IMG/VR virus record: IMGVR_UViG_3300038463_000730
Location: 186,001-250,000 of that record
DNA: 64,000 nt
Strand: one strand, 5' to 3'
In this document: one piece after another, positions 1-24,437 of the stretch
How positions within the stretch are numbered: the first letter of the stretch is position 1
How the letters are laid out: each line of letters starts with the position of its first letter
Translations under genes and position numbers: made by a program
The notes under the pieces: model-generated
Databases searched by the model: none
What the model was told of the DNA's origin: nothing
Seen by the model: the letters and a program-made list of their open reading frames with translations, nothing else

Positions 1-1510
1 CATTCTTTGCTGCAATAGCTGGCGCTTTTGGAAGTATTTCCTTCGTAAACCAATCAGCGAAACCAACTAGTGGACTAGTAGTATTCGATTGTGCTCCAGC
101 TTCACCGGTCGGACCCGGCCCGACTTTTTCTTTAATTTCACCTAGATACTTAAGAGCCGTATCCTGGTTCTTGCTAAGAACGTTCATTAGATTCTGGGTA
201 GCTTTCTCTACATCGCCCCAAGCGCCCCATCCACGAAAAACGTTCCCATACTGTTGCGAAATATGTTCCCCAACAATCATATAAATCGAGTTAGCTAGTT
301 TCCAACCTTCACGACACTTATCAGCTGCATCAACTAGCTGCTGAGCAGTAGAATTGGGTGAAAGATTACATGCCGCCGCGATCCCTGGCAGTTGAGCCTT
401 CAATTGCTCAACATAAAACCACTGACTACGATCTTCTTTGTTTGGATTGTTGCCTAACTCAGGAGCCTGACCTCTTGTGTCCTTCTGGAATTCCTCTTTT
501 AGATCTTCCGCTTCAGCTACAACGGCATTACCGGCCGCTTGGATCTTCTCTTGCGAATACCACATGTTCATTAGTAATTGGGTTGACCCTCCACCGAGAA
601 TGCCACCGATCGCGGCCCCCAATGCCCATGTCCCAAGACCAATGGCAGCAATCGTTGATCCAATTCCTCCCCCTCCGGCCGCAGCTCCACCTCCGGCAGC
701 GGCAGCACCGGCCCCAGCACCGGCAGCAGCCGGAGTAGTAGCGGCAGCCACACCACTATTCGCAATGAACCAGTCCGCTACTTGCGGAGCACCCCTTTGC
801 GCGAGCATTTTTAGTACTTGCTCTTCGGCTTCTTTCTGAGCAATGCCTTTGGCCGTGCGACTAGCAATCATTCTCTCGATTTCTTGCATGATCGCACCAG
901 GATTCTTATCCGGCACGGTCTTCGTGAGTTGGTAAATGGCCTTTACCAGCTGACCCATGATTTTGTCAGCTGCGGGGCCGAAAAAAGGGATAGCAGTTTT
1001 CTGCATTTCCTCCTTCTCTGCCAAGATCGTCTTCAATGCAGCCAATACCATTGTCTTCGACGCTAGTTTGCCGGTCGGTTCTTTCTCTACGACGTCTTTG
1101 ATCATTTTGTGTTGATCAAGTTTGTCTTCAACGACGCCAAGCTTGTCATGAGCCTCAGCCATTTCGACCGAACCAGCAGGGTGAGCGAATTCAAGCAGAG
1201 CTTCTCCGGTCTCCCCGTCCGTACCGTACATACGTACATAGTTCTGAGCCCTGACGTTCATGCGGAACTTCTCTTCCACACGCTCTGCCTCGGCAACGAG
1301 CCCCTTTACACGTAAGCCGAAACACAAACGAAGGATATCCTGGTTTAGGTTATCCGATGGAGCCAAACTAACATGACGTGGTGCCCTGGATAGGTTCCGC
1401 GCGGCTCGTTCTAGTCCGGATTCCTCTTTGATTAAATTCTTTTCTTTGGCGAGTTTGGTAAATTGCTGCATTACCTCACTCTGGCTTTCTGAAATGTGCT
1501 TATAAGTCAT
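1..1510 (-). CDS. Probable virion/internal-head protein with Gly/Ala-rich hydrophobic (glycine-zipper-like) segment; runs off the left edge (>=503 aa); absent from the ORF track
   Basis: Manual translation from ATG at 1510 (MTYKHISESQSEVMQQFTKLAKE...EMQKTAIPFFG...GIGSTIAAIGLGTWALGAAIGGILGGG...) is open to base 1 and carries KxA motifs like its neighbours. Confidence 0.75.
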   Translation of the reverse strand, partial: MTYKHISESQSEVMQQFTKLAKEKNLIKEESGLERAARNLSRAPRHVSLAPSDNLNQDILRLCFGLRVKGLVAEAERVEEKFRMNVRAQNYVRMYGTDGETGEALLEFAHPAGSVEMAEAHDKLGVVEDKLDQHKMIKDVVEKEPTGKLASKTMVLAALKTILAEKEEMQKTAIPFFGPAADKIMGQLVKAIYQLTKTVPDKNPGAIMQEIERMIASRTAKGIAQKEAEEQVLKMLAQRGAPQVADWFIANSGVAAATTPAAAGAGAGAAAAGGGAAAGGGGIGSTIAAIGLGTWALGAAIGGILGGGSTQLLMNMWYSQEKIQAAGNAVVAEAEDLKEEFQKDTRGQAPELGNNPNKEDRSQWFYVEQLKAQLPGIAAACNLSPNSTAQQLVDAADKCREGWKLANSIYMIVGEHISQQYGNVFRGWGAWGDVEKATQNLMNVLSKNQDTALKYLGEIKEKVGPGPTGEAGAQSNTTSPLVGFADWFTKEILPKAPAIAAKN

Positions 1511-1593
1511 AAGACGGGCTCCGTTCGGGGACAAAATCGATATTGATAGATCCGGGTCTTCCTATATACGTCAAATATAGCAGTTATGATAAG

Positions 1594-2463
1594 TTACTTG
1601 GCATTTTCACGCCGTATGCGAAGAATCACCTTCTCAGTTACTCCAAAATCTTTACCTACCTTACCGGCACCTCTTGGATCTGTCATGATTTGTTTAATCT
1701 GTTCATCGGTGAATACATGTTTGTTCGACGGTGCCTGTCCGATCGTGCGATGTGGAGGTAATGTTTCGAGCGTTCCGTTGCGCTTTAGACGCTGTCCATG
1801 CTTCATGCAATATAGTTCACCTTGGTATCTTAGATAATCCCGACCTCCACCAACCACATCACAATCAGGCGCATGGCACTTTCGCTTGCCTTCTGCAATT
1901 TCTTTCTCATGACGTTGTTTGGTTGTCTCTGCGATTGACTGAATACGTTTTCCCACAGTTTCTTCTGATTGAATACGACCGGTAAATACTTCTGAGAACT
2001 TTTGGCGCATTTCATCGGTATAAACTGTTGGATTTTTAATCTTTCCTTGACTTATATTATTGCAAGCTTCTTCGGAACGTATTCTGCCTTGACTCGGATG
2101 ACCGAGTTCTTCTATTTGGCGCAATGTTGCTTCACGTAATTTTTGTTTTGTAGACTCAGAATGAGCCGAAGAGCGACCCCCAGCTTTTAGGTTATAACCA
2201 AACTCATGGTTGCGTGTATCGTACTGTGTTATTAGCACCGCTTCTGTTTCATCGGCATCCTCACGAGTTTGACAAGTAGCAATTATTTCAAAAGTAAAAC
2301 TATCAACCCCATATTTATTCATGGCACGATGAATATACTGTCCGGTTTTTTCTGGATGTTTAGCAAAATAACAATGTTGCCTCCAACGATATTGATCTTT
2401 GTTAGACTGTCCGATGTAAACTTTGCTATTTATTGTATTTGTGATTTTATATAGATAATGCAT
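1594..2463 (-). mobile_element. Free-standing GIY-YIG homing endonuclease with NUMOD3-like repeats, a zinc module and C-terminal HTH
   Basis: HYLYKITNTINSKVYIGQS, GYNL..GG and HSESTKQKL motifs; start placed at ATG 2463 behind GGAGG. Confidence 0.88.
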
Positions 2464-2526
2464 AGTTGCCTCCACTAAACTAGTGGACAGCGTATTCTAT
2501 ATATCGACCTAATCCGAATTGTATAA

Positions 2527-3216
2527 TTAGAGCCAGAGATACTGCAAAGTTCCGTTAACCGGGCTCGGTGGCGCAATACAAAGCGCAACGGCTGGATGAT
2601 GCGGAGTAACTTGACGTGTCGTTAGTAAACCAAGTTCACTAACAAACAAGTTCGCATTCAATGGATAGACTTGGTTCGTCTCGTAAACGTCCGTTTCACC
2701 GATAAAGCGCTGAAACCATACCGCGATACGGCCAGCTCCGATTGTCGAGTCATCTCCAATGATATTTGGGATCTGGTAACGATAGTTAACAACCGCTCGA
2801 ATCGCATTCGGTTGTCCCGAGCCGATCGCATCGAAATTGAGCGGCGTTCCGGCTGGAAATGTCACCAGTCCGTTCCGAGCTGTCAAAACCAAGCTGATAC
2901 TGCTCGTAAAACTTGATTGGATAACGTTCGGGTTCTTGAGCGGCACGAGTACATCGATTGGGGTAACAAGCTGTCCGTTCGGACCCGGAACGCCCGTTGC
3001 CGGAACAATCACGAACTCATTCCATGATGGAGCGGTAAACGCTCGTGTACGGATCTCGTCGATTACGCCGATCGGCGCTCGACCATCACTAACTCCACAA
3101 ACAACCGTGTTTCCCGAGACGTTTAGCTGAGCAATCATGCCCGGTTCGAACTCGCTTGATGGATCTACTATAAAGCTGAATGGTAGAGCGTTTCCTGTTT
3201 GAATAATTCTAAGCAT
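2527..3216 (-). CDS. Beta-rich structural protein, possibly capsid decoration/cement-like
   Basis: Beta-strand/Gly-Pro composition (FEPGMIAQL..PIGVID..LFVSELGLLT); lies downstream of the protease/scaffold gene; function inferred from position. Confidence 0.45.
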   Translation of the reverse strand: MLRIIQTGNALPFSFIVDPSSEFEPGMIAQLNVSGNTVVCGVSDGRAPIGVIDEIRTRAFTAPSWNEFVIVPATGVPGPNGQLVTPIDVLVPLKNPNVIQSSFTSSISLVLTARNGLVTFPAGTPLNFDAIGSGQPNAIRAVVNYRYQIPNIIGDDSTIGAGRIAVWFQRFIGETDVYETNQVYPLNANLFVSELGLLTTRQVTPHHPAVALCIAPPSPVNGTLQYLWL

Positions 3217-3234
3217 ACCGTATATATACCGATA

Positions 3235-3669
3235 TTATCGCTCATCCTCGAAGTCTTTTAGCATTGATTCGACCTTATCAAGATCTTTTTCATCAATAAC
3301 TAGATCGTCCTTCGCTTCTGCACCTTCGAAATTGTTATGATCTTCCGCTTTGTAATCCTTGCGACGAAACGGAGTTCCGGTCTCGTGCAGACCCTTCTCT
3401 TCATTCGCAATTTCACTTTTCAGCTTCGAATCGCAATCCTGGCTAGCCAAGATCTCTAGGAATCTAGTTAGTTTACCAGCTTCTTTCCAGGCCTTGATTC
3501 GATCCAGTTTGTCTGCTGCGGTAGAAACAAGATCAATCGCTCTCGATATCTTTGTTGTTTCGAGCAAGTTTTCTGTTGCGTTCTTGGTAAGCAACTTACT
3601 CATCGAGTTACAGATCTCATCTTCTACGGATGTAGCAGCGAAGGCGCCTGGTTTTTTGAACGTATTCAT
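3235..3669 (-). CDS. Putative internal-head protein (paralog family with 3669-3884 and 3977-4642)
   Basis: EDEICNSM...AIDLVSTAADKLD helical module; LTKNA motif. Confidence 0.6.
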   Translation of the reverse strand: MNTFKKPGAFAATSVEDEICNSMSKLLTKNATENLLETTKISRAIDLVSTAADKLDRIKAWKEAGKLTRFLEILASQDCDSKLKSEIANEEKGLHETGTPFRRKDYKAEDHNNFEGAEAKDDLVIDEKDLDKVESMLKDFEDER

Positions 3670-3884
3670 TACTGCCCCGATCCGAATTTAGAGATTACCA
3701 ATGTAATGTACTCAGCCGCATCACCATATCCGGCCCGCTCGAAGATATCGGCTGCCGAATGAAGCATATCAATCGCTTCCATGGCTTCCTTCTCTATGTC
3801 AAGCTTTTCGTGACCGAATGTAGTATTGAGATTGGACATCATTGAGTTGGCCAACTCATCTTCGAGAGAAATCTTGTTTTTCAT
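3669..3884 (-). CDS. Putative internal-head protein (paralog)
   Basis: EDELANSM...AIDMLHSAADIFERAG; IEKEA motif; stop overlaps next start. Confidence 0.6.
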   Translation of the reverse strand: MKNKISLEDELANSMMSNLNTTFGHEKLDIEKEAMEAIDMLHSAADIFERAGYGDAAEYITLVISKFGSGQ

Positions 3885-3918
3885 ATGGTTCCTAATCTAA
3901 ATATAACCCCTCTAAAGA

Positions 3919-3957
3919 GAATGGAGAGCTTCGGTGATAGAAACCGGCTCTCCATTC
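3919..3957 (-). terminator. Stem-loop, probable terminator or processing hairpin
   Basis: GAATGGAGAGC (3919-3929) pairs with GCTCTCCATTC (3947-3957), with inner CGGT/ACCG; weak U-tract on the minus strand. Confidence 0.65.
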
Positions 3958-3976
3958 AAAGTTGCAGGGATGTGAG

Positions 3977-4642
3977 TTACTTCTTCTGAGCCTTCTCTTT
4001 TTCGAGCTTGGCTTTCTCTTTTTCTTTGCGAGCCTTATCATCGGCCTTGGCTTTATCAGCCTCTTCCTGCTTAAGTTTCTTGGCTTTCTCTTTGGCCTTC
4101 TGATCTTTGGCGTCCTGCTTATCCTTAAGCTTCTTAGCTTCCTCTTTGGTAAGCTTCTTTGCCTTGGCCTCTACTAGGATGTTATGTGCGAGCGTTAAGC
4201 TAAGTGCTGCTGTCTTATCAAGACCAGCCTCATCCAACACTTCAGACACTTTGCTGAGACTGTTAAGTGCTACTGCGATTGCCGTATTGAAGCCACCAAT
4301 CAGATCTTCTGCGCTGGCTTGATCATCGGCTTTGCATGAATCATCACATTCATGATCCTTTTCCATATCCTTTTTCTTACAACCCTTGGCTGCATGAACA
4401 TCATAAGGATCTCCGAAGCCTTTGGCGTCGTGCTTGTCCTCTTTGTCCTTTTTTGCGTCGTTGTCGTCCTTTTCCTTCTTTTTAAAAGGATTGGCGCGAG
4501 CGTCGTTGTCATCAACTTCATTGGCATCTTCTGCCTGACGCAACATGGCTGTCTTTGAGAACATTGATTCGAAATCTTTGCTCTTCATTAGTGCGTCCAT
4601 ATCGGCCGCAATCTGATACTCAAAACTGGTCGTCTTTTTCAT
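3977..4642 (-). CDS. Putative internal-head protein with Lys/Asp-rich repeats and a highly charged C-terminal helix
   Basis: FSKTA and LDKTA motifs; repeated DDNDA/DKHDA/DVHAA; SEVLDEAGLDKTA module. Confidence 0.6.
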   Translation of the reverse strand: MKKTTSFEYQIAADMDALMKSKDFESMFSKTAMLRQAEDANEVDDNDARANPFKKKEKDDNDAKKDKEDKHDAKGFGDPYDVHAAKGCKKKDMEKDHECDDSCKADDQASAEDLIGGFNTAIAVALNSLSKVSEVLDEAGLDKTAALSLTLAHNILVEAKAKKLTKEEAKKLKDKQDAKDQKAKEKAKKLKQEEADKAKADDKARKEKEKAKLEKEKAQKK

Positions 4643-4694: not shown

Positions 4695-7600
4695 TTAGTA
4701 CTTACGACCAGCGAAGGCCTTTGTTAGACTCGAATATAGATCGTCTGGCTCTCCTGATGGGAGCTGAGCCGATATCGGGTCACCTGATCCGATCATTCCG
4801 ATCATTGGAACACGTGATGCTTCCTTCTTGATTGCACGTGAAGGAGCCATCGCAACAATACGCTTCAAACTATTGAATGACTCGTCGTTGTAGCTGAGGA
4901 TTTCCTCGACCTGGGCCGCGAGAACGGATGGTTCCGTTCCGCACATTCCACGGTCTGCCATCTGGTAGGCCATGTCATATGCGCGTGCAACCTTTACCTT
5001 GTAGTCCGAGATCTCTTTCTCAGCAGCAGCCTTAGCATGCTCCTTTACAAGACCCTTCGCGAACTCCGATCCACCGTCAACAGGCTTCCACATCTGCATG
5101 TAGTAAGCGACTGCCGCTGGATCCGCTCCATGAGCAACGAGGTTTGGAACTTCCTCGTGGGTAATGGCTCCGGCTTTCACCATCTTCAAGATTTCCTCTG
5201 CATCCTTGCGGACCTTCGGTGGCGCCTCGGCGACATCCATCATCTTCGAGTGGATCTCTTCGATCTTCTCGATCTTGCCAAGGTCTCCCTCTGGCTTGAC
5301 GTCGAGCTGAGTCGTGTCGTCCGTGTACTTGTGGAACTCGGCCAACATTGGATTCCATTTGATCGACTCAGTCGCAAGCTTCGCACGGTATGCCGTACGT
5401 CCCTCGCGTGTCGTCAAGTCAAACGTCGCTGTATTCTTGAGTTCGAATTTCGTATCTGCTGGAGCCTGTGGCAAACTACCAAGCTGGTCCTTTGTCACTG
5501 CCACAGTGTTACCATTGTTACTATCGCTGGCCGCTGCCATTGCATGCTCCTTGTGTTCGCCTTCTTCTAGATTGACCAACTCCTTTAGCTCAGCAAGAAT
5601 TTGCTGCTCGGCTGGGTTTCCTTCGTCGTCTCCCCGTGCTTCGAGAGACGCAACCGCCTCAAGTGACTCGGTTCCACGTGCATAACGGACAAATCCGTCA
5701 AGACATTCTGTTGCATCGGCAAGAACATGGTTCGCATCAGAGATCGTGTCAGTTGACAACGTATCGATGTAAGAACGATTCTCTTCCGTGACAGCCTTGT
5801 TATCGTACAAGTCCTTCACTAGGTGAAGCTCGTCGATCTGGTTCTGAACCAAATCAGCTGTCTTGCGCATGCTGGACAATAGCGTCTTGTGAATGTCGAA
5901 ACGCATTCTCGACAATGTCGCTGTCGCCGCTGGCATACCCTCGCCCGGCGCCATCGGCGCTTCGCCTTCCATCGTCGGAATCGTATTACTAAGTTCTTCT
6001 TTTACATCGGAAAGATTAGTAATGGCTTCATCAAGCTTCTCGACCATCTGCTCTGGTCCGGCTTTGCCATCTCCGCCCTTGTCCGCTGTCGCAAGATCGC
6101 CCATCGGTGCGCCGCCCATTTCGCCCGCTGGCGAAGGAGCCGGTCCTGCCGCACCCATCGGTGCCGCATCCATTCCGCCACCCGCTGGTGCAACTGGAGG
6201 CTCGGCCTTCTTGAACATAGCAATGGCGCTTTCGAAACCATCGGCCTTGACCTTCTTCAACATCGATGCTCCGAACTCTTTCGTTGCAATCGACTCGCCG
6301 AGGACATCTGCACGTCCACTTGACAACTCATTAACAGTTGCCGCGAAAACTAGTTTGTCATCCGCAAAAATCTGCCACTGGCTCGCTCCGAGATCGACTT
6401 CACCAGTTGATGGCTTAGCAGCCTTGATGAATTTCGCTCGTAACGTTGCACGCTGCAAAAGCTCCTTGCGCTTTAGCTCGTCCTTTGGATCCGCAGACGA
6501 TGGCGACGGGTGTAGACCGGTCGTGCTGCCAACTCCTGGGAACGGAGGCTGGCCTTCCATCTGCTTGTCACCCTTCATACGAGTTTTCTCGTTGAGAGGA
6601 TCAACATCATACTTCTCTTTGCCTGGTGTGGGCTCGTTTACGCCACCCGCACCCTGGAAGTATGCACGACGCTTCTCAAGGGTTTCCTTGACGCGGGCAA
6701 TCGCTTCCTTACGGCGCGTACTACGCTGATCTAGCTCGGCGCGCAGAAGCCTCTTCTTACGAGCCTCCTCGCTTTCACCGGCTGACTGCGGTCCCGGGTG
6801 CATACCCTCGACCGGACCAGTGTCCATCTGGCCTTCCATTTGTTTATCACCGTGAGTACGGAGCTTCTCGTTTAGAGGATCCTTCTCGTACTTTGGTGTT
6901 CCTGGACTTGGCTCGTTCACACCACCGGCACCCTGAAAATAGCTCTTTTTTTCCATTGTTGTTTCCCTTGACCCATCACCTAGATTTGACAATTTACGAA
7001 AGTCCTCTTCAATCTTTGCGAGTTTATGCTCGATATCACGTTTTAGTGATAGGAACTGGTTCTTTAATGCATCATTATTCTCAGAATTCGTAGATGCAAC
7101 GCGCAAAGCGTAAGGATTATTCAGCGCCGCTGGATCTTGATCCAACGGAACCTGGGTTGCATCGACTATCGATGAACCACTATTACTAAAGTTTGAGGAA
7201 TCCTGAACCTCGCCCTCGTCTCGACCATCAAACTCTCGGATGAGAGTGTCCAGACCTTCTTTAATATGACTTACAATCTGTTGTTTAATTTCGTTGACCT
7301 TTTCACTTGATGTGCCGGTCAATGACTTAAGTTCGCTCAACCCTGCATCGGCCTGACTGTTTAGAGTCCTGGCAGATGCTAGAATATGACGAATCTTAGC
7401 TTGTGGATCGGCACCGTTAACTACGATCGATAGCTCTAGTGGCTTTAGATCCAAGTTAATCTCGCCGTAACATGACTTGCTGGTCATATGCGAACAAAAG
7501 TCCGCTTCCGTACGCGCAACACGTCCACAATCACTACAGATTGCACGACCCACTGCCGTACCCATCGATACACATGTAGCGTACCCTGTAGAAACTTTTC

Positions 7601-8117
7601 TTGCTAATTCAGGGAACGAAACTTTATCAAGCGCACATAACGCAATAACGCGCTTGGCCTTGCGGTCGTAATATGTATCGATGATTACACCACGAATGTG
7701 ATCTACTGATCCAGACTTGTGATCGATACAGAGTGGGCATCCGACCCACTTCTTGTAAGCTTTAAGTAACTCTTCCTCTGGGAAGATGTCACCGTTCGAA
7801 TTCTTGTAAGGCATGACCGATGGATCATTAGATACCCATCGAAGCGATTCGCCATTCGTCGCCCAACCAGCTGTTACCGGAAGACCACTGGCTGTCTTCT
7901 TTGGTTTACCTTCCGGGTCAACCGTTGAAGCCTCGGCTGCATGCATCATGACAGCTGAGAAATAAAGAAAGTCATCTCCCTTTGGAGCGATTCGCTTCAA
8001 ACCAGTCGCTAACGACTTAATGCGACTCTCAAGCTCTGGATCTGCAAGCACCTTCTCGGGTGACTCAATATCTGATTCCAAAACCTGACCTATTTCAGCA
8101 AACTTGTAAAGGGTCAT
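4695..8117 (-). CDS. Prohead (capsid maturation) protease fused to a long scaffold-like/polyprotein region
   Basis: N-terminal NSNGDIFPEEEL..IDH..IRGVIID..VSMG..CSDCG..C.H..E.N....ELSIVVNGADPQAKI fits a herpes/HK97-fold phage head protease; followed by coiled coils and a duplicated ~70-aa repeat. Confidence 0.78.
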   Translation of the reverse strand: MTLYKFAEIGQVLESDIESPEKVLADPELESRIKSLATGLKRIAPKGDDFLYFSAVMMHAAEASTVDPEGKPKKTASGLPVTAGWATNGESLRWVSNDPSVMPYKNSNGDIFPEEELLKAYKKWVGCPLCIDHKSGSVDHIRGVIIDTYYDRKAKRVIALCALDKVSFPELARKVSTGYATCVSMGTAVGRAICSDCGRVARTEADFCSHMTSKSCYGEINLDLKPLELSIVVNGADPQAKIRHILASARTLNSQADAGLSELKSLTGTSSEKVNEIKQQIVSHIKEGLDTLIREFDGRDEGEVQDSSNFSNSGSSIVDATQVPLDQDPAALNNPYALRVASTNSENNDALKNQFLSLKRDIEHKLAKIEEDFRKLSNLGDGSRETTMEKKSYFQGAGGVNEPSPGTPKYEKDPLNEKLRTHGDKQMEGQMDTGPVEGMHPGPQSAGESEEARKKRLLRAELDQRSTRRKEAIARVKETLEKRRAYFQGAGGVNEPTPGKEKYDVDPLNEKTRMKGDKQMEGQPPFPGVGSTTGLHPSPSSADPKDELKRKELLQRATLRAKFIKAAKPSTGEVDLGASQWQIFADDKLVFAATVNELSSGRADVLGESIATKEFGASMLKKVKADGFESAIAMFKKAEPPVAPAGGGMDAAPMGAAGPAPSPAGEMGGAPMGDLATADKGGDGKAGPEQMVEKLDEAITNLSDVKEELSNTIPTMEGEAPMAPGEGMPAATATLSRMRFDIHKTLLSSMRKTADLVQNQIDELHLVKDLYDNKAVTEENRSYIDTLSTDTISDANHVLADATECLDGFVRYARGTESLEAVASLEARGDDEGNPAEQQILAELKELVNLEEGEHKEHAMAAASDSNNGNTVAVTKDQLGSLPQAPADTKFELKNTATFDLTTREGRTAYRAKLATESIKWNPMLAEFHKYTDDTTQLDVKPEGDLGKIEKIEEIHSKMMDVAEAPPKVRKDAEEILKMVKAGAITHEEVPNLVAHGADPAAVAYYMQMWKPVDGGSEFAKGLVKEHAKAAAEKEISDYKVKVARAYDMAYQMADRGMCGTEPSVLAAQVEEILSYNDESFNSLKRIVAMAPSRAIKKEASRVPMIGMIGSGDPISAQLPSGEPDDLYSSLTKAFAGRKY
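6447..6941 (-). repeat. Two copies of a ~70-aa repeat (YFQGAGGVNEP.PG..KY..DPLNEK.R..GDKQMEGQ...G.HP.P.SA...RK..L.RA) at ~6738-6941 and ~6447-6662
   Basis: Directly visible in the translation. Confidence 0.92.
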
Positions 8118-9050: not shown

Positions 9051-10262
9051 TTAGACAAAGCCGCCTCCAATTGGACCACTGGTTCCCCAACCAAATCCGT
9101 TCGTGTTAGTTCCACCATCGGATGTTCCGACTTGCGGAACCTCATTAGGCTCTATACCACCTGGTACCTTTTTTGGTATGATATCAGCTTTCGGGTCAGT
9201 ATCGGTTCCTTGTCCATTTTGGTTTCTAGTACTAGCCGAACTATTTACGAAATCCCAGTGACTACCGTATGACGCATCACCCATGCCGTACGGGTTGACT
9301 TCGTTAGCTTCGTACAGTCTGACGCCGAAAGATGGGTCGTTAAGCTCGTAGCTTGTATCGAACTTGTAGTCCGCCACAGCATCGGGCCACAGCATCTCCA
9401 TCGCCGAATTCGAATCTTGACCAGCTATCGCATGGATCATCTTCTCGTAAAGCGTACGTACTTTCTTTGGTAATCCGGAGCAAAAATCGAACTTGTCTGC
9501 TTCAGCAATCGCATCCTCCGGGCTCATACCTTTCGACACCCGGTACAACGCAACCACGAGCCCGGTACGATCCTTACCATGCAAACAATGTACAAAAGTC
9601 GGACCTGATTCTTCGAATAGCTCTTTGAAATTCATCTTCATCAAGCCACGCAACGACTGTTGCTTCTTAGCCATGATCGGAATTATCACGTGGACCATTC
9701 CGAGCTTCTTCACGAGTGGACCGATCTTCTTAGCCGTGTCCAAATCCAAACTAACAATCTTCTTGATACCTAGTTTCTTCAGGTATATAAGGTCCTCAGG
9801 AGTAGCGGGAGCACCTCCTCGATAAAGCTGGTCGGTAACCTTAGAAAACCTAGGAATCGCTGGGTCTTCCAACACATCCACCGAACTCTCATCCCCCTCA
9901 GGTATGCCTTCGAACTTAAATTTCTTCCCCAACAAAGCGAGTGTTGTGCGAAGCGCTTTCTCTTCACTTTTTCCTTTCAATGCTGGAAACACAGAGTCGA
10001 ACACAGACTTGAACAAGACCCGGAACAACGCAAACAATTCATCATTGCCTGACGCACGCAATTTACGCATGACCGCCGAGTACGATAGGTCACCGACGTC
10101 AGATAGGTTGATAGAGTCGGTCGCGATCTTCCGAATCTCAACTTCTTTTAGACGTTCGACTGCCTTAGAACGACTCGAAAAGGTTCCGAAGTTCTTTCCG
10201 GTGTATGATTGCACCTGGTATCTCCCGTTCGGAAGTTTCCGGATGATGGCAGTCTTGATCAT
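9051..10262 (-). CDS. Protein-tyrosine/dual-specificity phosphatase (Siw14/IphP-like) with N-terminal extra domains
   Basis: FSKVTDQLYRGGAP, LKKLGIKKIVSL and P-loop FVHCLHGKDRTG (HCX5R). Confidence 0.88.
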   Translation of the reverse strand: MIKTAIIRKLPNGRYQVQSYTGKNFGTFSSRSKAVERLKEVEIRKIATDSINLSDVGDLSYSAVMRKLRASGNDELFALFRVLFKSVFDSVFPALKGKSEEKALRTTLALLGKKFKFEGIPEGDESSVDVLEDPAIPRFSKVTDQLYRGGAPATPEDLIYLKKLGIKKIVSLDLDTAKKIGPLVKKLGMVHVIIPIMAKKQQSLRGLMKMNFKELFEESGPTFVHCLHGKDRTGLVVALYRVSKGMSPEDAIAEADKFDFCSGLPKKVRTLYEKMIHAIAGQDSNSAMEMLWPDAVADYKFDTSYELNDPSFGVRLYEANEVNPYGMGDASYGSHWDFVNSSASTRNQNGQGTDTDPKADIIPKKVPGGIEPNEVPQVGTSDGGTNTNGFGWGTSGPIGGGFV

Positions 10263-14254: not shown

Positions 14255-16105
14255 TTATTTCGGCGGAGGTGGAGGTGGAGCTGCGCCTGCGCCAGCTTCT
14301 CCACCCGGAGGGCCACCTGGAGGCGCCCCGGGAGGACCGGGCGGTCCGCCACCCGGAGGAGCACCAAGATCCGGCATACCGCCGCCACCACCGGCACCTG
14401 GCAAGTCACCACCGCCTCCACCACCGTCGTCATCACCACCTGGCGTTTCACCAGGCAACGGAGCTTCGGCGGTCTCTGGGATCTCATCCTCATCGCCAAG
14501 AGTGCGAAGCTCGTTGAGCGGCATCTTTTGCAAGCTCACTTGCTCCTTTTTGCGAATCGCGTCCTGCACATCTTCCTTGCGCATCTTACGAACCTCTTCC
14601 TCGAACTCTAGTCCGAGCGAACGATAGAGTGTCTGGTTTGATACGCGCTTGTTCTTTACGTCATCTGTCAAATGAACAAGGTTCTGAATATAGTCACCGG
14701 CATCGAAGAGCGACATGTGATTCCAGTCAATCTCCGGAATGATCAAATGCTTCTGCTTCTCGTGGAACACATAGAATTCGTTCAACTTCGAGATCGGTGC
14801 GAAAATCTTGCGACGCAACCACGTTGAGAGCATGTTACGGAACTGCATGTAACGTTGACGAAGTACGTCCAACGCTACACCGCCGTTGGCATAGGTCGTA
14901 TCCTGACCACCATCCATCAATACAGATGGTACCATCAATCCGATCCAGATTTCTTTAATCAGTTGCGTGATGTCACCAGAGATATCATAGATACCCTGAC
15001 CCGAACCGATACGCTCAACCGTTACGGCATCGTTTGTGAAGATCTTGAAGTCTTTGTCGTACTGTGCTGCTTCGAAAATCTCACGATACGAATCGATTTG
15101 CTGCGGACTTGGTTTGAACTCAGGTGATCCGACCTTCACCAACGTGAGTGGGTTGATCATATTGTCTGCCTGAGCGAACTTTGACTCACGGAGCTTGTCA
15201 AAGAGCATCAACTGACGAAAAAACGCGACCGGTAGTCCGGTTCCACGTGACTCGTACGGCGAGATACGTCGTGCAAGATGGCTTACATAAAAATTGTCAA
15301 GCGGAATGTTCTGGCCACGCTTGACGTACTCAATAATGTGCGGCCCGAGCTGTTTCTTTTGTTCAAGATCAGATGGTTTCTGCGAAAACACGATACGACG
15401 GAGGTTGGCATCAGGCCTGAGCATGATAATCGGTTCACTTGATATAACCGAAGGACTGACAACAACATAATCCGGGTTCTGAATACGGAGACGACTCCAA
15501 CGAAGATTGCGCTCATCCAATTCAGCATAGATAAATGACTCCCCTAGCAGCCAGAACTCCTGAGCAATCTGAACGCAGACGTTCATCAAGTCGATTTCAT
15601 CAATCATCTCATTGAAGAACTTTTCAACACGTTTATCAGGACAACGAATCGTCATCTTACTGATCGGATACGTGCTATGTAGATTGATTGCGTTGTTCAC
15701 GAACGGGTTCAACGCATAGAAGCTGCGACACCACGCATTGATCGTCGCTCGATCACGAGGAAGGTTTAGGTTCGAGTTTAGCCAAAGAGGAGAATAGACC
15801 TCCGGCGCCTGACGTACCGTGTCTCCCATACCACCTTGCCATTGAGCCGAGGTGTTTGTTCCTAGTGTACTGGAAAGGTTGGCGTACTTCGACATCGGCT
15901 GTTTACCAACCGAATACGTTGCGTAACCACCGGCACTAGGCTCTTCATCTCGTGCAACGGGACCGGAGCCATCTCGATAGATGCCTTTGTTTACCTCTTC
16001 TTCAAGAGCAGCACGTCGATATTGAGAAACATTGCGTGCCACATGACTCGATATGATCGGTGGCAGATTTCTATTAGGTATTCTTGGGTTTCTAGGGTTA
16101 ACCAT
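14255..16105 (-). CDS. Portal protein
   Basis: NPFVNNAINLHSTYP, EFWLLGESF, HLARRISPYESRGT, GL.VPSVLMDG..TYAN; near terminase and protease; Gly/Pro tail. Confidence 0.8.
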   Translation of the reverse strand: MVNPRNPRIPNRNLPPIISSHVARNVSQYRRAALEEEVNKGIYRDGSGPVARDEEPSAGGYATYSVGKQPMSKYANLSSTLGTNTSAQWQGGMGDTVRQAPEVYSPLWLNSNLNLPRDRATINAWCRSFYALNPFVNNAINLHSTYPISKMTIRCPDKRVEKFFNEMIDEIDLMNVCVQIAQEFWLLGESFIYAELDERNLRWSRLRIQNPDYVVVSPSVISSEPIIMLRPDANLRRIVFSQKPSDLEQKKQLGPHIIEYVKRGQNIPLDNFYVSHLARRISPYESRGTGLPVAFFRQLMLFDKLRESKFAQADNMINPLTLVKVGSPEFKPSPQQIDSYREIFEAAQYDKDFKIFTNDAVTVERIGSGQGIYDISGDITQLIKEIWIGLMVPSVLMDGGQDTTYANGGVALDVLRQRYMQFRNMLSTWLRRKIFAPISKLNEFYVFHEKQKHLIIPEIDWNHMSLFDAGDYIQNLVHLTDDVKNKRVSNQTLYRSLGLEFEEEVRKMRKEDVQDAIRKKEQVSLQKMPLNELRTLGDEDEIPETAEAPLPGETPGGDDDGGGGGGDLPGAGGGGGMPDLGAPPGGGPPGPPGAPPGGPPGGEAGAGAAPPPPPPK

Positions 16106-17784: not shown

Positions 17785-19638
17785 TTATCTCATTCTTGGA
17801 ACTGTGCCAAGCGTAATTGGCAAATTACCGTGTTTTCTCTTGTCAAACGGGTTATTGAAGAGTAGCGGATTTTTTACAGTGAACCCTTGTGTTAGATAGA
17901 ACTTGTAAGCCAGGTACCCGTTCAACATAGCCATGAAACCGTCATTAGGAGTCGCTCCCTTCACATAGTGCGGCGACATATCTCCAGAACGATTAACGCT
18001 TGGTTTAATCTCCATGCTAGTACAGTGCTGTACGAGCCAATTCACCTTCTCATAGTCGCCGTAAGGAAACCGTACATGGCCTTTCTTCATTTGCTCGTAC
18101 ATTTCACCAATAGAAAAGTCGCGCTCGAACTGAATCATCTTTGGAAAGATGTCCTTCTGGAACTTTACCTTGTCCATAATTCTTGGGAGCGCGTTCGATG
18201 CCAAAAACTTGTCTCCATACTCGTTCTGCATTATCTCGCAGAAGTCGTTTGAGTACCCGATATCGCATACTGCCACGTTCACACTGTAAATCCGCATCAA
18301 ATGGTCTATGAACGCCTTCTTACTAGCGAAGTCGTTACGCTTGAACTTCGCTGCAAACTCGATTTGCAGGCGTTTTGGACCGGACAGCGACATGATCACG
18401 ACGCAGCTATAGCTCTGACCAACTCCTTTCAGCTTCGAGTTCTCTGCGAGCTGCTCCATGTCCGATTTGGCCCCGATGTCGATACCCATGAACACAGCTT
18501 GCTCGGCACCCGGTGGAATATGTGCCCGGAAACGACGCCCAACATCTCCGCATTTCTCACGGACATCATCCGGAGTCATGATACCGGACTCACCCGAGAA
18601 GAACTCTCCCAATACCTCGTTCTGGTAGGCTCGTTCTGTATTGATCGGTGAGTTTCCTGGCTTTTCTGATACAATCTTCTCTTTGTTGAATTCCGGAATG
18701 AACAACTGGCTCATGTGGAAACCGATGAACGGACAATCGTCCGGGTTCTTCAACGCTACCCACTTGCCAGTTTCGGCGGCATCACGTTTATCTTGTTCGT
18801 GATTGCAATGTGGGCACTTGACGGTAAAACCGTGAAGCCACGTCTTCTCCCAGTCATCCGTGCCGGGGGTATAGAGCGGGAAGAACCGATTGCAACCAGA
18901 ACAATGTAAATTAAAATATTGCTGTGACGATTGGTTCCACATCTCGAAGAACTCGCTACCGCGCTGCTTCGGTGTACCGAAGAATATCTGAACACCGTCA
19001 CCTAGTTTTCCATAGTTAGCTTTCGCCAACATCTTGGTCGCGTTACCTATGGCGAGACCAGGGATATCTTGTACTTCATCGAAGAAAATAACATCGGCTG
19101 ATCGACCACGAAGTCTGTCAGCCGTTTCACCCGTTGATTCGATCCAGATATGATTGCCGCCAACGAACTGTTTGAAATTCAACGAATCATTTCGTCCGCT
19201 CGTTTGATCCAGTAGGCCTTGCATATAGGACCGAGGCTTCTGCCCCTTCTTCGCCTGATCGAACGACACAGCGTTCGTGATCATCGGGTTGAGCTTGGTT
19301 TTAGAGTAAGCGTAAGCTAGATCCAACTGCGGGAATGCATGGATGATACGCATCGGAGGGTTACTGGAGTTACCAAATAACCCACACCCCATGAAGTACA
19401 TCTCCAAGGCTGATGCCATCGTCGTGGCACCAACCTGGCGCCCTTTTACGATGATAACTGGCTTCGAATCTTTCTCCAAAGCCTTGATCGCAATGTAGCG
19501 ATAGATATCGGAGAACGGCTTGTAACCGCCTCGCAAAGTAAACGGTTTACCGTCGAGTGTAAGATACTTTTCGACGTAATAAATTGGGTCTAAACTTAAA
19601 AGTGAAGACTTAAGTTGTGCAAATAATTCATCAGACAT
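17785..19638 (-). CDS. Terminase large subunit (lambda GpA-like)
   Basis: Walker A KGRQVGAT, LRGRSADVIFFDE Walker B, GTP coupling motif, CxxC..CxxC ribbon, nuclease GIDIG and NDGFMA. Confidence 0.92.
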   Translation of the reverse strand: MSDELFAQLKSSLLSLDPIYYVEKYLTLDGKPFTLRGGYKPFSDIYRYIAIKALEKDSKPVIIVKGRQVGATTMASALEMYFMGCGLFGNSSNPPMRIIHAFPQLDLAYAYSKTKLNPMITNAVSFDQAKKGQKPRSYMQGLLDQTSGRNDSLNFKQFVGGNHIWIESTGETADRLRGRSADVIFFDEVQDIPGLAIGNATKMLAKANYGKLGDGVQIFFGTPKQRGSEFFEMWNQSSQQYFNLHCSGCNRFFPLYTPGTDDWEKTWLHGFTVKCPHCNHEQDKRDAAETGKWVALKNPDDCPFIGFHMSQLFIPEFNKEKIVSEKPGNSPINTERAYQNEVLGEFFSGESGIMTPDDVREKCGDVGRRFRAHIPPGAEQAVFMGIDIGAKSDMEQLAENSKLKGVGQSYSCVVIMSLSGPKRLQIEFAAKFKRNDFASKKAFIDHLMRIYSVNVAVCDIGYSNDFCEIMQNEYGDKFLASNALPRIMDKVKFQKDIFPKMIQFERDFSIGEMYEQMKKGHVRFPYGDYEKVNWLVQHCTSMEIKPSVNRSGDMSPHYVKGATPNDGFMAMLNGYLAYKFYLTQGFTVKNPLLFNNPFDKRKHGNLPITLGTVPRMR

Positions 19639-22541: not shown

Positions 22542-24437
22542 TTACTTAGCTGCCGGAGACATCGGTCCACCTGGTGTCACGGTCGGTGGAACGATTGGTT
22601 TCTCTTGTTTCTTTGTGATCGGCCCTAGTTCGGTTGCAATCGGCTCAACTTCAGCCGGGGCCTTGGACTTGTTCTCAACTTGGTTCATCAAATTGGTCTG
22701 CTCGACGTTCTTACGAAGCTCCTTGCGTAGCTTGTCTTTCTTCATCTGCTCGCCTAGGTGTTGTTTGACACCGGCCAACTCGCCACCCTCCGGCTGATTC
22801 TCTTCTGCATCGAGTTCTGTCTCTTTAGGCTGATTGTTGATTGAGTGCTGCTGTCCCATGTCATGGAGTGACTTCCCCTGGCCATCTAGAGCGCCACCGA
22901 TACGTGAACGAACCTCTTCAATACGTGTCAAACAGTACTGGTTCGATTCAAGCGCCGAGCGAGTAGCCTCGGCAAGCGATGGGAAGAAGCTGGATAGCCC
23001 AAGTTTGTCCATCATCATATCAACGATTGACAATCGACGAGCAATCTCACGATTCTTGAAGATACGACTCAAATCGTCAAGCTGGCGAACAATATCGGCC
23101 ACCTTCAACGTAGCAAACGCCGCATCGATGAGCGCATCAAAATCCTTGTGCTCCGGACCCGTATCTTTCTCGGAAACTTCGATGTCCGAACCTGGTTTCG
23201 CGACCGGCTTATCCATCGGCTTCGGACCAGAAATGACAGGCTTTGGTTCCCCAAGTGGTTTGGGTAGTCCGGGAGGTTTCGGACCAAGGTTTGTCGGAGC
23301 CTTTGCCAACGGTGGCTCTGCCATCTGCGCCTGAGATACACGATAGCCATGGTTATCAATTCCAAGATGGGAGTCATCAATATCCATCGTATCTTCGACT
23401 TCCAAGACATCTGCTTTCGCGGTATCAATCTGAACTTCCTCGTCTTCGGCTGAGTCATCATCGTCGTCTGGTCCGAACCCGTTTAGTCCGTCCAGAAACT
23501 CCTTCATCCCCTTGTTCGGATCCCCAGCAAGCGGGGATGCCCCCACAGGAGGGGTCGGAGCAGGAGCAGAGTTCGGAGCGCCCGCAGCTTGAGGCGCAGG
23601 CGGAACCGCTGGCGCAGCAGAACCCTGCGGTATTGGTGCCGCATCGTTCTCATCTTCATCATCGACGTCATCCGAATCTTCATCATCGTCTTCCATGTCA
23701 TCTGCGAAAAAGTTCGGACTGATATTTCCAAGTTCGCCACCATGTGTGCCGGAAGTGTATGCATCAGACGATAGATCACCGTGACCAGGCAATCCTTGTG
23801 CAATCTTCACTAAGAAATCATGTGATTTAACCAATCCGGCGCGTTTCAGAATGTTCGCGCGACGAATAATCATGTCCTGATAGATTTCACTCGATTCGGT
23901 CTTCTTGTTTACTTGATGAAACTGTTTTTCGAGCTCATTCAGAGCGTCGAGAAGCTTCTCCCAGTGCTCTCCGCCAACAGCTTTGCCGTTGTCATCGGTA
24001 AGTAGTTTACGAGCCGAGTGGAGGCGTCCGATGATCTTCTTGCGGTGAAGCTCAATCTTCTTTTTACGTTCTTCTTCCGATATAACCTGGTCTTTTGCCG
24101 AGTTAACATCAGCCGTGTTACCAACAGGGATCGCCGCGCCAGGTGATGGGACCGGATCCGGAATTGTTGGGCGTGTTGGAAGGAAGTAACCCTGATAGCC
24201 GTACTGTGCTTGCTTGTATTTCATATGGTTCTTCTCTTCGTAGAACTTGATCCAATACGAAAAGTCGAGTTGGTCGTCTTCATGCCAATCGCGCGTTATC
24301 GTTTTGAATGCTTGTTGAAATGGAACGCCGAAATTACATCGGGCTTTGATTTGACGAAACGCTTCCATCCACTTCTCAGTATTCCGAGGTGGCTTATGGG
24401 CAATATAGTCATCATAGTTAGGGTATGCCTGTTTCAT
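22542..24437 (-). CDS. Large putative internal-head protein with acidic and Pro-rich linkers
   Basis: MKQA, YKQA and LVKIA motifs; RRANILKRAGL helical module. Confidence 0.6.
   Translation of the reverse strand: MKQAYPNYDDYIAHKPPRNTEKWMEAFRQIKARCNFGVPFQQAFKTITRDWHEDDQLDFSYWIKFYEEKNHMKYKQAQYGYQGYFLPTRPTIPDPVPSPGAAIPVGNTADVNSAKDQVISEEERKKKIELHRKKIIGRLHSARKLLTDDNGKAVGGEHWEKLLDALNELEKQFHQVNKKTESSEIYQDMIIRRANILKRAGLVKSHDFLVKIAQGLPGHGDLSSDAYTSGTHGGELGNISPNFFADDMEDDDEDSDDVDDEDENDAAPIPQGSAAPAVPPAPQAAGAPNSAPAPTPPVGASPLAGDPNKGMKEFLDGLNGFGPDDDDDSAEDEEVQIDTAKADVLEVEDTMDIDDSHLGIDNHGYRVSQAQMAEPPLAKAPTNLGPKPPGLPKPLGEPKPVISGPKPMDKPVAKPGSDIEVSEKDTGPEHKDFDALIDAAFATLKVADIVRQLDDLSRIFKNREIARRLSIVDMMMDKLGLSSFFPSLAEATRSALESNQYCLTRIEEVRSRIGGALDGQGKSLHDMGQQHSINNQPKETELDAEENQPEGGELAGVKQHLGEQMKKDKLRKELRKNVEQTNLMNQVENKSKAPAEVEPIATELGPITKKQEKPIVPPTVTPGGPMSPAAK

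What the first reader, a model, noticed from the sequence alone, without database searches (positions are those of the whole stretch)
3235..4642. Three tandem paralogs, and other head proteins, share an A-x-x-(L/F)-(D/E)-x-x-G-x4-A helical module
Seen: EDEICNSM..AIDLVSTAADKLDRIKAWKEA, EDELANSM..AIDMLHSAADIFERAGYGDAA and EYQIAADM..ALNSLSKVSEVLDEAGLDKTA align by eye. Similar segments occur in 22542-24437 (ANILKRAGLVKSHDFLVKIA), 26326-27048 (AEEFDSSGDDFLQKQA), 1-1510 (CFGLRVKGLVAEA) and the phosphatase (MRKLRASGNDELFA). Inference: a portable prohead-targeting or core-assembly module, analogous in role to the T4 capsid-targeting sequence, often adjacent to a K-x-A site.
Basis: partly seen in the sequence, partly recalled or inferred. 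Interest (0 to 1): 0.68.

Follow-up and report, generated by a model that had tools for sequence, protein, structure and literature searches.

The report
Three paralogous head-assembly genes in megaphage
Three small neighbouring genes in the capsid-assembly block of an uncultured 435-kb peat phage are ancient copies of one another that share an N-terminal helical-hairpin domain of an undescribed protein family, but the claim that other head proteins carry the same module does not rise above chance.

Summary
The window is part of a 434,688-bp uncultured megaphage from peat. Its major capsid protein is 52% identical to that of Bacillus phage G.

**The three ORFs.** A (3977-4642), B (3669-3884) and C (3235-3669) are all on the minus strand. 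They lie between a fused prohead protease-scaffold gene (4695-8117) and a capsid decoration gene (2527-3216).
- B and C are certain paralogs (profile-profile E 6e-21).
- A is a probable distant one (E about 1e-4, same register, well above an empirical null). It carries an acidic insert inside the domain and a lysine-rich tail.
- The order A, B, C is kept in 51 of 64 related loci.

**The shared unit.** It is a roughly 70-residue helical hairpin. It sits at the very N-terminus in essentially all of the top 145 metagenomic relatives (826 clusters in total). It has no Pfam, PHROG or PDB match.

**The other proteins.** Their likeness to the domain is at chance level. A TPR-repeat protein matches the same pattern nine times.

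**Function (inferred).** The three are most likely accessory prohead-core or scaffold proteins, and the hairpin is an oligomerisation or docking domain. A B-C complex prediction gave only weak support. This is a real but modest finding.

The parts
3977..4642 (-). Gene A, 221 aa. Domain helix 1 at residues 1-32, then an acidic Asp/Asn-rich insert (family median net charge -10), then helix-Gly-helix at residues 118-160, then a Lys-rich tail (family median +13, 37% Lys).
   Evidence: ORF. An A-family ORF lies at this position in all 64 loci that hold both protease and D229. Charges. Consensus.
4547..4642 (-). A, N-terminal helix of the shared domain (residues 1-32). Family consensus MkN.kSVSDFVAA.MDAvLkS.
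   Evidence: Colinear weak match to HMM columns 1-23. Consensus.
4163..4291 (-). A, helix-Gly turn-helix half of the shared domain (residues 118-160). Family consensus AfDVAIDSLLTASAALDsvGleKss.lSLKLAS.
   Evidence: hhalign against B and C families E 1e-4 and 2e-4, and 6.3e-5 with score 30.8 against at most 20.1 for 18 other families. The reciprocal HMM finds 38 B/C members.
3669..3884 (-). Gene B, 71 aa. It is the bare domain: helix 1, helix 2, Gly turn, helix 3. Family consensus MFK..SfEdEIyrSMEK.LVsNQ...F.KLA.kAaDyLNaAA.IFd.AGM..EA.EiTeVL.sLA.
3235..3669 (-). Gene C, 144 aa. Domain at residues 14-77, then a conserved short motif region, an acidic disordered tail, and a C-terminal DFEDE motif. 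Its start overlaps B's stop (TAATG).
   Evidence: AF2 model has pLDDT 75 with helices 15-57, 61-77, 82-96 and 127-138. About 40 of 48 orthologs end in an FED-type acidic motif (FEDE/FEDS and variants).
3439..3630 (-). C, shared hairpin domain (residues 14-77).
   Evidence: HMM match 15-72, E 1.5e-16. AF2 helices.
4695..8117 (-). Context: 1140-aa fusion of a prohead maturation protease (N-terminal about 250 aa) with a long scaffold-like region. It lies immediately upstream of A.
   Evidence: phrog_18299 head maturation protease, 1.3e-15. 36% identity to phage G gp19. Orthologs found in 80 loci.
2527..3216 (-). Context: D229, a capsid decoration/cement protein immediately downstream of C. It is very conserved (55-75% identity).
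   Evidence: AF2 pLDDT 77.5. The top 15 structural matches are all phage capsid decoration/cement proteins, Z 10.2-6.5. Alignment.
1250..1510 (-). Possible fourth, very distant copy of the domain, at the N-terminus (from Met9) of the 558-aa ORF that runs off the window. Unresolved.
   Evidence: Family consensus MTFKH.KFeDS.tMRSLEK...KLCaGLR.sGf.KyA.ElE is colinear with the domain from residue 1. hhalign E 0.002-0.02, probability 2-10%. It is the best of the non-family profiles in the null set, at E 0.016.
3920..3956 (-). Stable RNA hairpin (10-bp perfect stem, 17-nt loop) in the 92-nt A-B spacer. It may be a partial terminator or a processing/stabilising element that sets A:B/C stoichiometry.
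   Evidence: Sequence. Spacer MFE -30.5 kcal/mol, z -4.08, 0 of 200 shuffles as stable.

Best explanation
A, B and C are three ancient tandem paralogs of an undescribed protein family. The family is specific to one clade of phage-G-related megaphages.

**What is shown**
- The shared unit is a roughly 70-residue N-terminal alpha-helical hairpin: helix 1, helix 2, a Gly turn and helix 3.
- B is the bare domain.
- C adds an acidic disordered tail that ends in a conserved FEDE motif.
- A has an acidic insert inside the domain and a lysine-rich tail.
- The genes lie between the prohead protease-scaffold gene and a capsid decoration gene.

**What is inferred**
- They are accessory components of the prohead core or scaffold. 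This is comparable in role to the small core proteins gp67 and gp68 and the internal proteins of T4.
- The hairpin serves as the oligomerisation or docking domain that builds them into the core, possibly as B-C hetero-oligomers.
- The oppositely charged tails supply contacts with the scaffold, the shell interior or the DNA.
For: **Paralogy**

**Ancient, maintained duplication**
- A, then B, then C keep the same order in 51 of 64 loci, and A comes first in 63 of 63.
- Module identity across genomes is 53% for B-B and 38% for C-C. B-C within one genome is 34%. One tree split separates 90 of 95 sequences by position.

**Head-module context**
- TerL and portal lie upstream, and the protease upstream of A.
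- The decoration-fold protein D229 lies downstream.
- The major capsid protein lies further downstream: phrog_2522 1.7e-73, and 52% identity to phage G gp27.
- A distant family member, P0177, shows the same synteny.

**Domain architecture**
- The AF2 model is a helical hairpin with a disordered acidic tail.
- The domain is at residues 1-70 in essentially all of the top 145 relatives. Tails have a median charge of -12. 71 of 128 longer members end in F[ED][DE]x.

**B-C binding**
- Complex prediction gave 'weak support': ipSAE 0.38 in three runs against a best control of 0.01. The partner's pLDDT was at least 62 and at least 83% of contacts agreed.
- By the tool's calibration, a pass at this level was reached at or below 0.60 by only 7 of 80 solved complexes and by both mismatched pairs that passed.

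**Analogy**
- The T4 core holds gp67, gp68 and the IPs, and the protease degrades or trims them (PMC9958956).
Against: - No experiment or proteome exists; the phage is uncultured.
- There is no sequence or fold link to any known scaffolding or internal protein. The fold is a generic hairpin (best Z 7.5).
- Phage G, Tunturi_5 and a 485-kb uncultured relative lack the family, so it is not a universal part of this capsid lineage.
- The complex prediction is only weak.
- Metatranscriptome contigs cover the protease-scaffold gene but not A, B or C.
- A's homology rests on E values of about 1e-4 over 30-42 columns of a common helix-turn-helix pattern.
Confidence: 0.45

Rival explanations
1. One reading: a short portable helical module, A-x-x-(L/F)-(D/E)-x-x-G-x4-A, is shared by many head proteins (ORFs 1-1534, 9051-10262, 22542-24437, 26326-27048) and targets them to the prohead like the T4 capsid-targeting sequence.
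For: - The segments exist, and those in three of the four proteins are conserved among orthologs.
- The best local profile match of each of these three families to the module falls on the Gly turn.
- The ORF 1-1534 family is colinear with the domain from its first residue.
Against: - E values of 0.002-0.04 with probabilities of 1-13% are what is expected when a few proteins are picked by eye from about 75.
- The whole-genome HMM scan puts these proteins at E 2 to 6 or lower.
- The loosened motif is not enriched over shuffles, nor in the structural block.
- A TPR-repeat protein matches the same columns nine times, so the pattern is a generic helix-turn-helix.
- The segment in 9051-10262 loses its Gly in the one aligned ortholog.
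Confidence: 0.08
2. A, B and C are internal head proteins that stay in the virion rather than transient scaffold parts. In particular, A would be a DNA-condensing or charge-neutralising protein through its Lys-rich tail. They could be ejected with the DNA.
For: - A's tail has a median charge of +13 and is 37% Lys across 65 family members.
- T4 internal proteins are loaded through the core and stay with the DNA (PMC3012670; PMC9958956).
- A 435-kb genome needs much charge neutralisation (inference).
Against: - B and C are acidic (medians -4 and -17). That is unlike DNA-binding internal proteins and more like expelled scaffold.
- No proteome is available.
- A's acidic insert roughly cancels its tail; the family's net charge median is 0.
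Confidence: 0.2
3. A is not homologous to B and C. The likeness is convergence on a common amphipathic helix-Gly-helix pattern, so only two paralogs exist.
For: - BLASTP finds nothing.
- hhalign probability is only 47-65%.
- The pattern is TPR-like and common.
Against: - A scores 30.8 against at most 20.1 for 18 unrelated neighbouring families.
- Both halves match colinearly and start at residue 1.
- The reciprocal HMM finds 38 B/C members in register.
- A is adjacent to B/C in 63 of 63 loci.
Confidence: 0.2
4. The three genes are non-structural passengers in the head operon, such as regulators, anti-defence proteins or chaperones of the decoration protein, and have no role in the prohead core.
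For: - Small fast-evolving helical proteins with acidic tails are also typical of anti-defence and regulatory phage proteins (general knowledge).
- There is no structural homolog.
Against: - The fixed position between the scaffold and decoration genes holds across all loci examined.
- The three-gene set is maintained through an old duplication.
- There is no match in PHROGs, whose families include many anti-defence and regulatory proteins. PADLOC was not searched.
Confidence: 0.1

Closest known systems
T4 capsid-targeting sequence (CTS) of internal proteins IPII/IPIII
   Same: Both are N-terminal elements shared by several proteins encoded in or near the head module. Here the shared element is at residue 1 in essentially all of the top 145 relatives. 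The T4 CTS directs proteins into the scaffolding core (PMC9958956; PMC3012670).
   Different: - The CTS is about 10 residues and is cleaved off. Here the unit is a folded 60-70 aa hairpin.
- CTS cargo proteins are diverse. Here the tails are mostly acidic low-complexity sequence.
- Neither cleavage nor targeting has been shown here.
- The protease is of the phage G gp19 type, not T4 gp21.
T4 minor prohead-core proteins gp67 and gp68
   Same: Both are small proteins encoded beside the prohead protease and scaffold genes. In T4 they are built into the core in hundreds of copies and degraded at maturation (PMC9958956). This is the role proposed here.
   Different: No sequence relationship was found: the family matches no PHROG. 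Presence in the core is inferred here, not shown.
Helix-loop-helix scaffolding proteins (phi29 gp7; coat-binding domain of P22 gp8)
   Same: Both are small helical proteins with a helix-turn-helix motif, encoded beside the capsid genes. phi29 gp7 also has a flexible tail (my own knowledge, not tested here).
   Different: - The profile finds no solved scaffolding protein at E up to 10.
- None appears among the top 50 structural matches.
- P22's motif is C-terminal and basic. This one is N-terminal and acidic.
Paralogous head-protein families of giant phages (phiKZ / 201phi2-1 / SPN3US)
   Same: Both are gene duplication producing sets of related head-internal proteins in phages with very large capsids (PMC5694885 and PMC7411985, as listed).
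   Different: The lineage differs (phage-G-like HK97-type head module). There is no sequence relation. Processing sites are unknown.
TPR-like helical hairpins
   Same: The helix 2-Gly-helix 3 pattern (A..L..A...F...G....A) matches each of nine repeats of a TPR-like repeat protein, P0045.
   Different: This is a single hairpin with an extra N-terminal helix, not a repeat array. The match shows that the pattern is generic, not that the two are related.

Membership tests
T4-type capsid-targeting sequence | A short (about 10 aa) N-terminal peptide conserved among otherwise unrelated head-internal proteins | tested here: not met
   The shared region is 58-70 columns long and folds as a hairpin. Outside the A/B/C family no protein of the genome matches it. 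The N-terminal 24-column HMM finds only B, C and, at noise level, A.
T4-type capsid-targeting sequence | Removed by the prohead protease at a defined site after incorporation | not testable with these tools
   No proteomic data exist. No conserved K-x-A or other site is evident in the family consensus.
T4-type capsid-targeting sequence | Sufficient to carry a foreign protein into the prohead | not testable with these tools
   This needs a fusion experiment in a cultivable relative or a recombinant procapsid system.
Helix-loop-helix scaffolding proteins (phi29 gp7 / P22 gp8 C-terminal domain) | Helix-turn-helix fold in a small protein encoded beside the capsid genes | tested here: met
   The AF2 model has helices 15-57 and 61-77 joined by a 3-residue turn. 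The genes lie between the scaffold-protease and decoration genes. The feature is generic.
Helix-loop-helix scaffolding proteins (phi29 gp7 / P22 gp8 C-terminal domain) | Detectable sequence or structural similarity to a solved scaffolding protein | tested here: not met
   A profile search of all PDB chains at E up to 10 returned 9 unrelated hits. Foldseek against PDB gave none. The VIA-align wide top 50 holds no scaffolding protein.
Helix-loop-helix scaffolding proteins (phi29 gp7 / P22 gp8 C-terminal domain) | Present in proheads, absent from mature virions | not testable with these tools
   The phage is uncultured.
A/B/C hairpin family (defined here) | N-terminal 58-70 aa domain matching the B/C profile | tested here: met
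   B scores 3.2e-17 and C 7.5e-17. A scores 0.011 by HMM and 6.3e-5 by profile-profile comparison.
A/B/C hairpin family (defined here) | Membership of ORF 1-1534, 22542-24437, 26326-27048 and 9051-10262 | tested here: inconclusive
   ORF 1-1534 gives E 0.002-0.02 and is colinear from residue 1. 26326-27048 gives E 0.0022, and 22542-24437 gives E 0.038. All have probabilities of 13% or less. The 9051-10262 segment is not conserved.
Pfam DUF5661 | Match to PF18905 above the gathering score | tested here: not met
   The window's A, B and C have no Pfam match. The domain is appended to the hairpin only in a few relatives: L006:9417-9824 at 1.4e-11, and 2 of 144 family members.

The most novel reading that the evidence does not exclude
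The N-terminal hairpin is a true prohead-incorporation domain, a folded and larger functional counterpart of the T4 capsid-targeting sequence. Phage-G-like megaphages would use it to load a set of proteins into a giant capsid's core. The set would be A, B and C, and possibly the 558-aa protein with a Gly/Ala-rich hydrophobic segment that follows the decoration gene. The oppositely charged A and C tails would pair inside the core.
Probability: 0.15. Interest if true: 0.6.

Novelty: new member of a known kind. Interest (0 to 1): 0.32.

Why it matters
It is not understood how capsids that hold more than 400 kb are sized and built. The only cultured megaphage of this lineage (phage G) lacks these genes.

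A conserved trio of small paralogs is wedged between the scaffold-protease and decoration genes. It is present in hundreds of metagenomic clusters and absent from Pfam and PHROGs. That makes it a concrete candidate for a clade-specific set of assembly factors, and a defined N-terminal domain that could be tested as an encapsidation tag.

The negative result also matters. The short helix-Gly-helix pattern is too generic to be used as evidence of a shared module.

Tried and rejected
**Searches for known relatives, all empty or uninformative**
- Megablast of the region and tblastn of B-like and D229 proteins against 50,697 phage records gave no match.
- Pfam and PHROGs on A, B and C gave nothing. 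PHROGs on all 61 aligned members gave only scattered noise.
- A profile search against PDB sequences found nothing relevant.
- Foldseek against PDB and BFVD with the C model found nothing. The best hit was a 69-aa uncultured-phage protein that is probably a family member.
- The exhaustive structural search returned only generic hairpins, Z 7.5 or less.
- The ESM Atlas returned only unnamed viral clusters.
- The family profile has no match in phage G, Tunturi_5 or LR745208. Local HMMs against the phage G head region also found nothing.
- The word-index protein search returned 32 hypothetical proteins without names or domains.

**Interaction and expression**
- Complex prediction of C(1-100) with B gave 'weak support' only: 0.38 against a best control of 0.01. 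I do not claim binding.
- Reads: one peat metatranscriptome holds three short contigs on the protease-scaffold gene and none on A, B or C. Contigs cannot show absence, so there is no expression evidence either way.

**Motif ideas considered and dropped**
- FEDE as a general motif of head proteins: only 6 of 695 proteins carry F[ED][DE]E, and no pattern emerges.
- The N-terminal 24-column HMM as a detector of further family members found none.
- The T4 CTS sequence itself was not compared, because I had no tool-derived copy of it.

- No alternative genetic code was used.
- Read laying was given 5,701 letters.
Full report
**What the window is**

The window is bases 186,001-250,000 of a 434,688-bp IMG/VR virus record. 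Nearly all genes are on the minus strand. Near-identical DNA occurs in peat metagenomes from several studies.

The head block, read along the minus strand, runs in this order:

| Gene | Window coordinates | Evidence |
|---|---|---|
| Large terminase | 17785-19638 | |
| Portal | 14255-16105 | |
| Prohead protease fused to a scaffold-like region (1140 aa) | 4695-8117 | phrog_18299; protease domain 36% identical to phage G gp19, |
| A, B, C | 3235-4642 | this finding |
| D229 (229 aa) | 2527-3216 | see below |
| GIY-YIG homing endonuclease | 1594-2475 | |
| Five further ORFs | beyond the window edge | |
| Major capsid protein | outside the window | phrog_2522 1.7e-73; 52% identical to phage G gp27, |

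So this is an uncultured relative of phage G. I folded D229 with its alignment (pLDDT 77.5). Its 15 best structural matches are all phage capsid decoration or cement proteins: BB1 Z 10.2, HFTV1 10.0, XM1 8.9, Pam3 8.7, TW1 8.7 and the phi29 gp8.5 base 7.4. The three genes of the finding therefore sit inside the capsid-morphogenesis block.

**Checking the observation: B and C**

- BLASTP gives E 6e-6.
- Using the protease-scaffold protein I fetched 80 related loci. An HMM iterated from B finds 125 ORFs in them. There are never more than two per locus. All are on the coding strand, and all lie between the protease gene and D229.
- I split these by position into a B family (47 distinct sequences, median 76 aa) and a C family (48 sequences, median 206 aa). 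The two profiles align at probability 99.4%, E 5.9e-21.
- The duplication is old. Module identity is 53% for B-B across genomes and 38% for C-C. It is only 34% for B-C within one genome. One tree split sorts 90 of 95 sequences by position.

**Checking the observation: A**

- BLASTP sees nothing.
- The B/C-only HMM ranks A third among 695 proteins of the genome (E 0.011, next hit 0.6). It matches in two colinear pieces, A7-29 and A120-146.
- An HMM of A's residues 113-165 recovers 21 B and 17 C members in register.
- For an empirical null I clustered the neighbourhood genes into 20 families and aligned each to the module profile. B/C scored 167.7, A scored 30.8 (E 6.3e-5), and the other 18 families scored 7.5-20.1.
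- A is therefore most likely a third paralog. Its domain is split by an acidic insert of about 85 residues.
- The gene order A, B, C is found in 51 of 64 complete loci, and A comes first in 63 of 63.

**Checking the observation: the other head proteins**

- The quoted segments exist.
- The motif exactly as written occurs once in the proteome, in B, against 0.6 expected. The relaxed form needed to include the other segments occurs 49 times against 45.8 +/- 6.5 in shuffles. Its density is 0.44 per 1000 aa in window genes and 0.34 elsewhere.
- In the genome-wide HMM scan these proteins score E 2 or worse.
- At family level I gathered orthologs from five complete megaphage genomes. The segments in ORFs 22542-24437 and 26326-27048 are conserved, and so is the one in ORF 1-1534.
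- Their best matches to the module are E 0.038, 0.0022 and 0.016, with probabilities of 1-13%. Choosing three or four proteins by eye from about 75 makes such values unremarkable.
- One top hit of the large database search, P0045, is a TPR-like repeat protein. Its nine repeats each match module columns 24-54. This shows the helix-Gly-helix pattern is generic.
- The one case I would not dismiss is ORF 1-1534. This is suggestive but unproven.

**What the shared unit is**

- AlphaFold2 of C with a 61-sequence alignment gives pLDDT 75. It shows helix 15-57, a three-residue turn, helix 61-77, helix 82-96, a disordered acidic stretch, and helix 127-138.
- The conserved residues are the hydrophobic core and the turn: M15, L19, L41, A44, A45, F48 and A51 in B numbering.
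- The domain has no Pfam, PHROG, PDB-sequence or specific structural relative.
- A profile search of 1.84 billion representatives finds 826 clusters at E 1e-3 or better, and 421 at 1e-10 or better. In essentially all of the top 145, the domain occupies residues 1-70 of proteins 68-382 aa long. They start MIK or MFK. Their tails have a median charge of -12. 71 of 128 longer proteins end in F[ED][DE]x.
- Only 2 of 144 carry a plausible appended Pfam domain in the tail (DUF5661); the few other hits are isolated and unrelated.
- A distant member examined in context shows the same synteny.
- Phage G, Tunturi_5 and a 485-kb uncultured relative lack the family. Tunturi_5 has a separate protease gene and a gene of about 500 aa in the scaffold position, whereas in this clade the protease and scaffold are fused.

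**How it most likely works (inference)**

- The position, the fast evolution, the helical hairpin with charged disordered tails, and the maintained three-gene set fit accessory prohead-core or scaffold proteins best.
- A known analogy is the T4 core. Besides gp22 and the protease, it contains hundreds of copies of the small proteins gp67 and gp68 and the internal proteins. All are degraded or trimmed at maturation (PMC9958956).
- I propose that the hairpin is the oligomerisation or docking unit, and that the tails provide electrostatic contacts. The tails are A's acidic insert (about -10) with its lysine-rich tail (about +13, 37% Lys), and C's acidic tail (about -11) with its terminal FEDE.
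- A B-C complex prediction passed its controls only weakly: ipSAE 0.38 against 0.01, partner pLDDT at least 62, at least 83% contact agreement. The tool rates such a pass as more often wrong than right unless it was likely beforehand. I treat it as a hint only.
- Whether the proteins leave the head (scaffold) or stay (internal proteins; A as a DNA binder) cannot be decided here.

**Comparison with the known**

- It fails the defining features that could be tested. It is not short, and it is not shared by unrelated proteins.
- Membership in the helix-loop-helix scaffolding proteins fails on sequence and structure searches.

**Verdict**

This is a real, previously undescribed paralogous family in a megaphage head module. 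The portable-module claim is not supported. The function is inferred, not shown.

Noticed in passing
window 2527-3216 (-): The 229-aa protein just downstream of C is the most conserved gene of the neighbourhood (55-75% identity across loci). It has no Pfam, PHROG or PDB-sequence match. It is predicted to have the fold of trimeric phage capsid decoration/cement proteins (Z up to 10.2). A second beta-rich 238-aa ORF lies just before the major capsid gene, so the phage may have two decoration proteins.
   Followed up: partly
window 3920-3956 (-), in the 92-nt spacer between A and B: A perfect 10-bp stem with a 17-nt loop. The spacer folds at -30.5 kcal/mol (z -4.08). Most related loci have only a few bases between A and B, so the element seems specific to this phage. 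It is a possible partial terminator or processing site.
   Followed up: partly
window 1594-2475 (-): A free-standing GIY-YIG homing endonuclease gene is inserted between the decoration gene and the next head gene. The clustered family holding its homologs has 25 distinct members, so it is found in only some of the related loci, as expected of a mobile element.
   Followed up: partly
L087:835-5358 (a related Logan contig): The protease-scaffold gene of this relative is 1507 aa and carries weak to faint Pfam hits to intein/Hint and LAGLIDADG families. A prohead protease-scaffold gene may thus be interrupted by an intein.
   Followed up: no
window 4695-8117 (-), protein residues about 395-440 and about 490-535: The scaffold-like part of the 1140-aa protein contains two copies of a repeat of about 40 residues (YFQGAGGVNEP.PG..KY..DPLNEK.R..GDKQMEGQ).
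   Followed up: no
L006:9417-9824, L069:12046-12492, L075:12434-13222: In a few relatives the B-position protein carries a C-terminal DUF5661 domain (PF18905, E 1.4e-11 in L006). This is the only Pfam domain seen repeatedly and significantly fused to the hairpin.
   Followed up: partly
C family C-termini (window 3235-3255 and orthologs): An FED-type acidic motif (FEDE/FEDS and variants) lies at the extreme C-terminus in about 40 of 48 C orthologs and in 71 of 128 longer database relatives. The same FEDE string opens helix 1 of B and C. Why the motif occurs at both ends is unexplained.
   Followed up: partly
window 2-1534 (-) and G000:185858-187534: The 558-aa protein has a long Gly/Ala-rich hydrophobic central stretch. 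Its conserved N-terminus may be a very distant copy of the hairpin domain (E 0.002-0.02).
   Followed up: partly
G000:180137-181153 (-), outside the window: The major capsid protein (338 aa) has about 45 N-terminal residues that lie outside the tblastn match to phage G gp27 (query 46-328). These residues are covered by phrog_2522, so they may be a propeptide removed at maturation.
   Followed up: no
window 4802-4948, 5974-6200, 7022-7226: A peat metatranscriptome run holds three short contigs, 99-100% identical, on the protease-scaffold gene only. DNA carry-over cannot be excluded.
   Followed up: no
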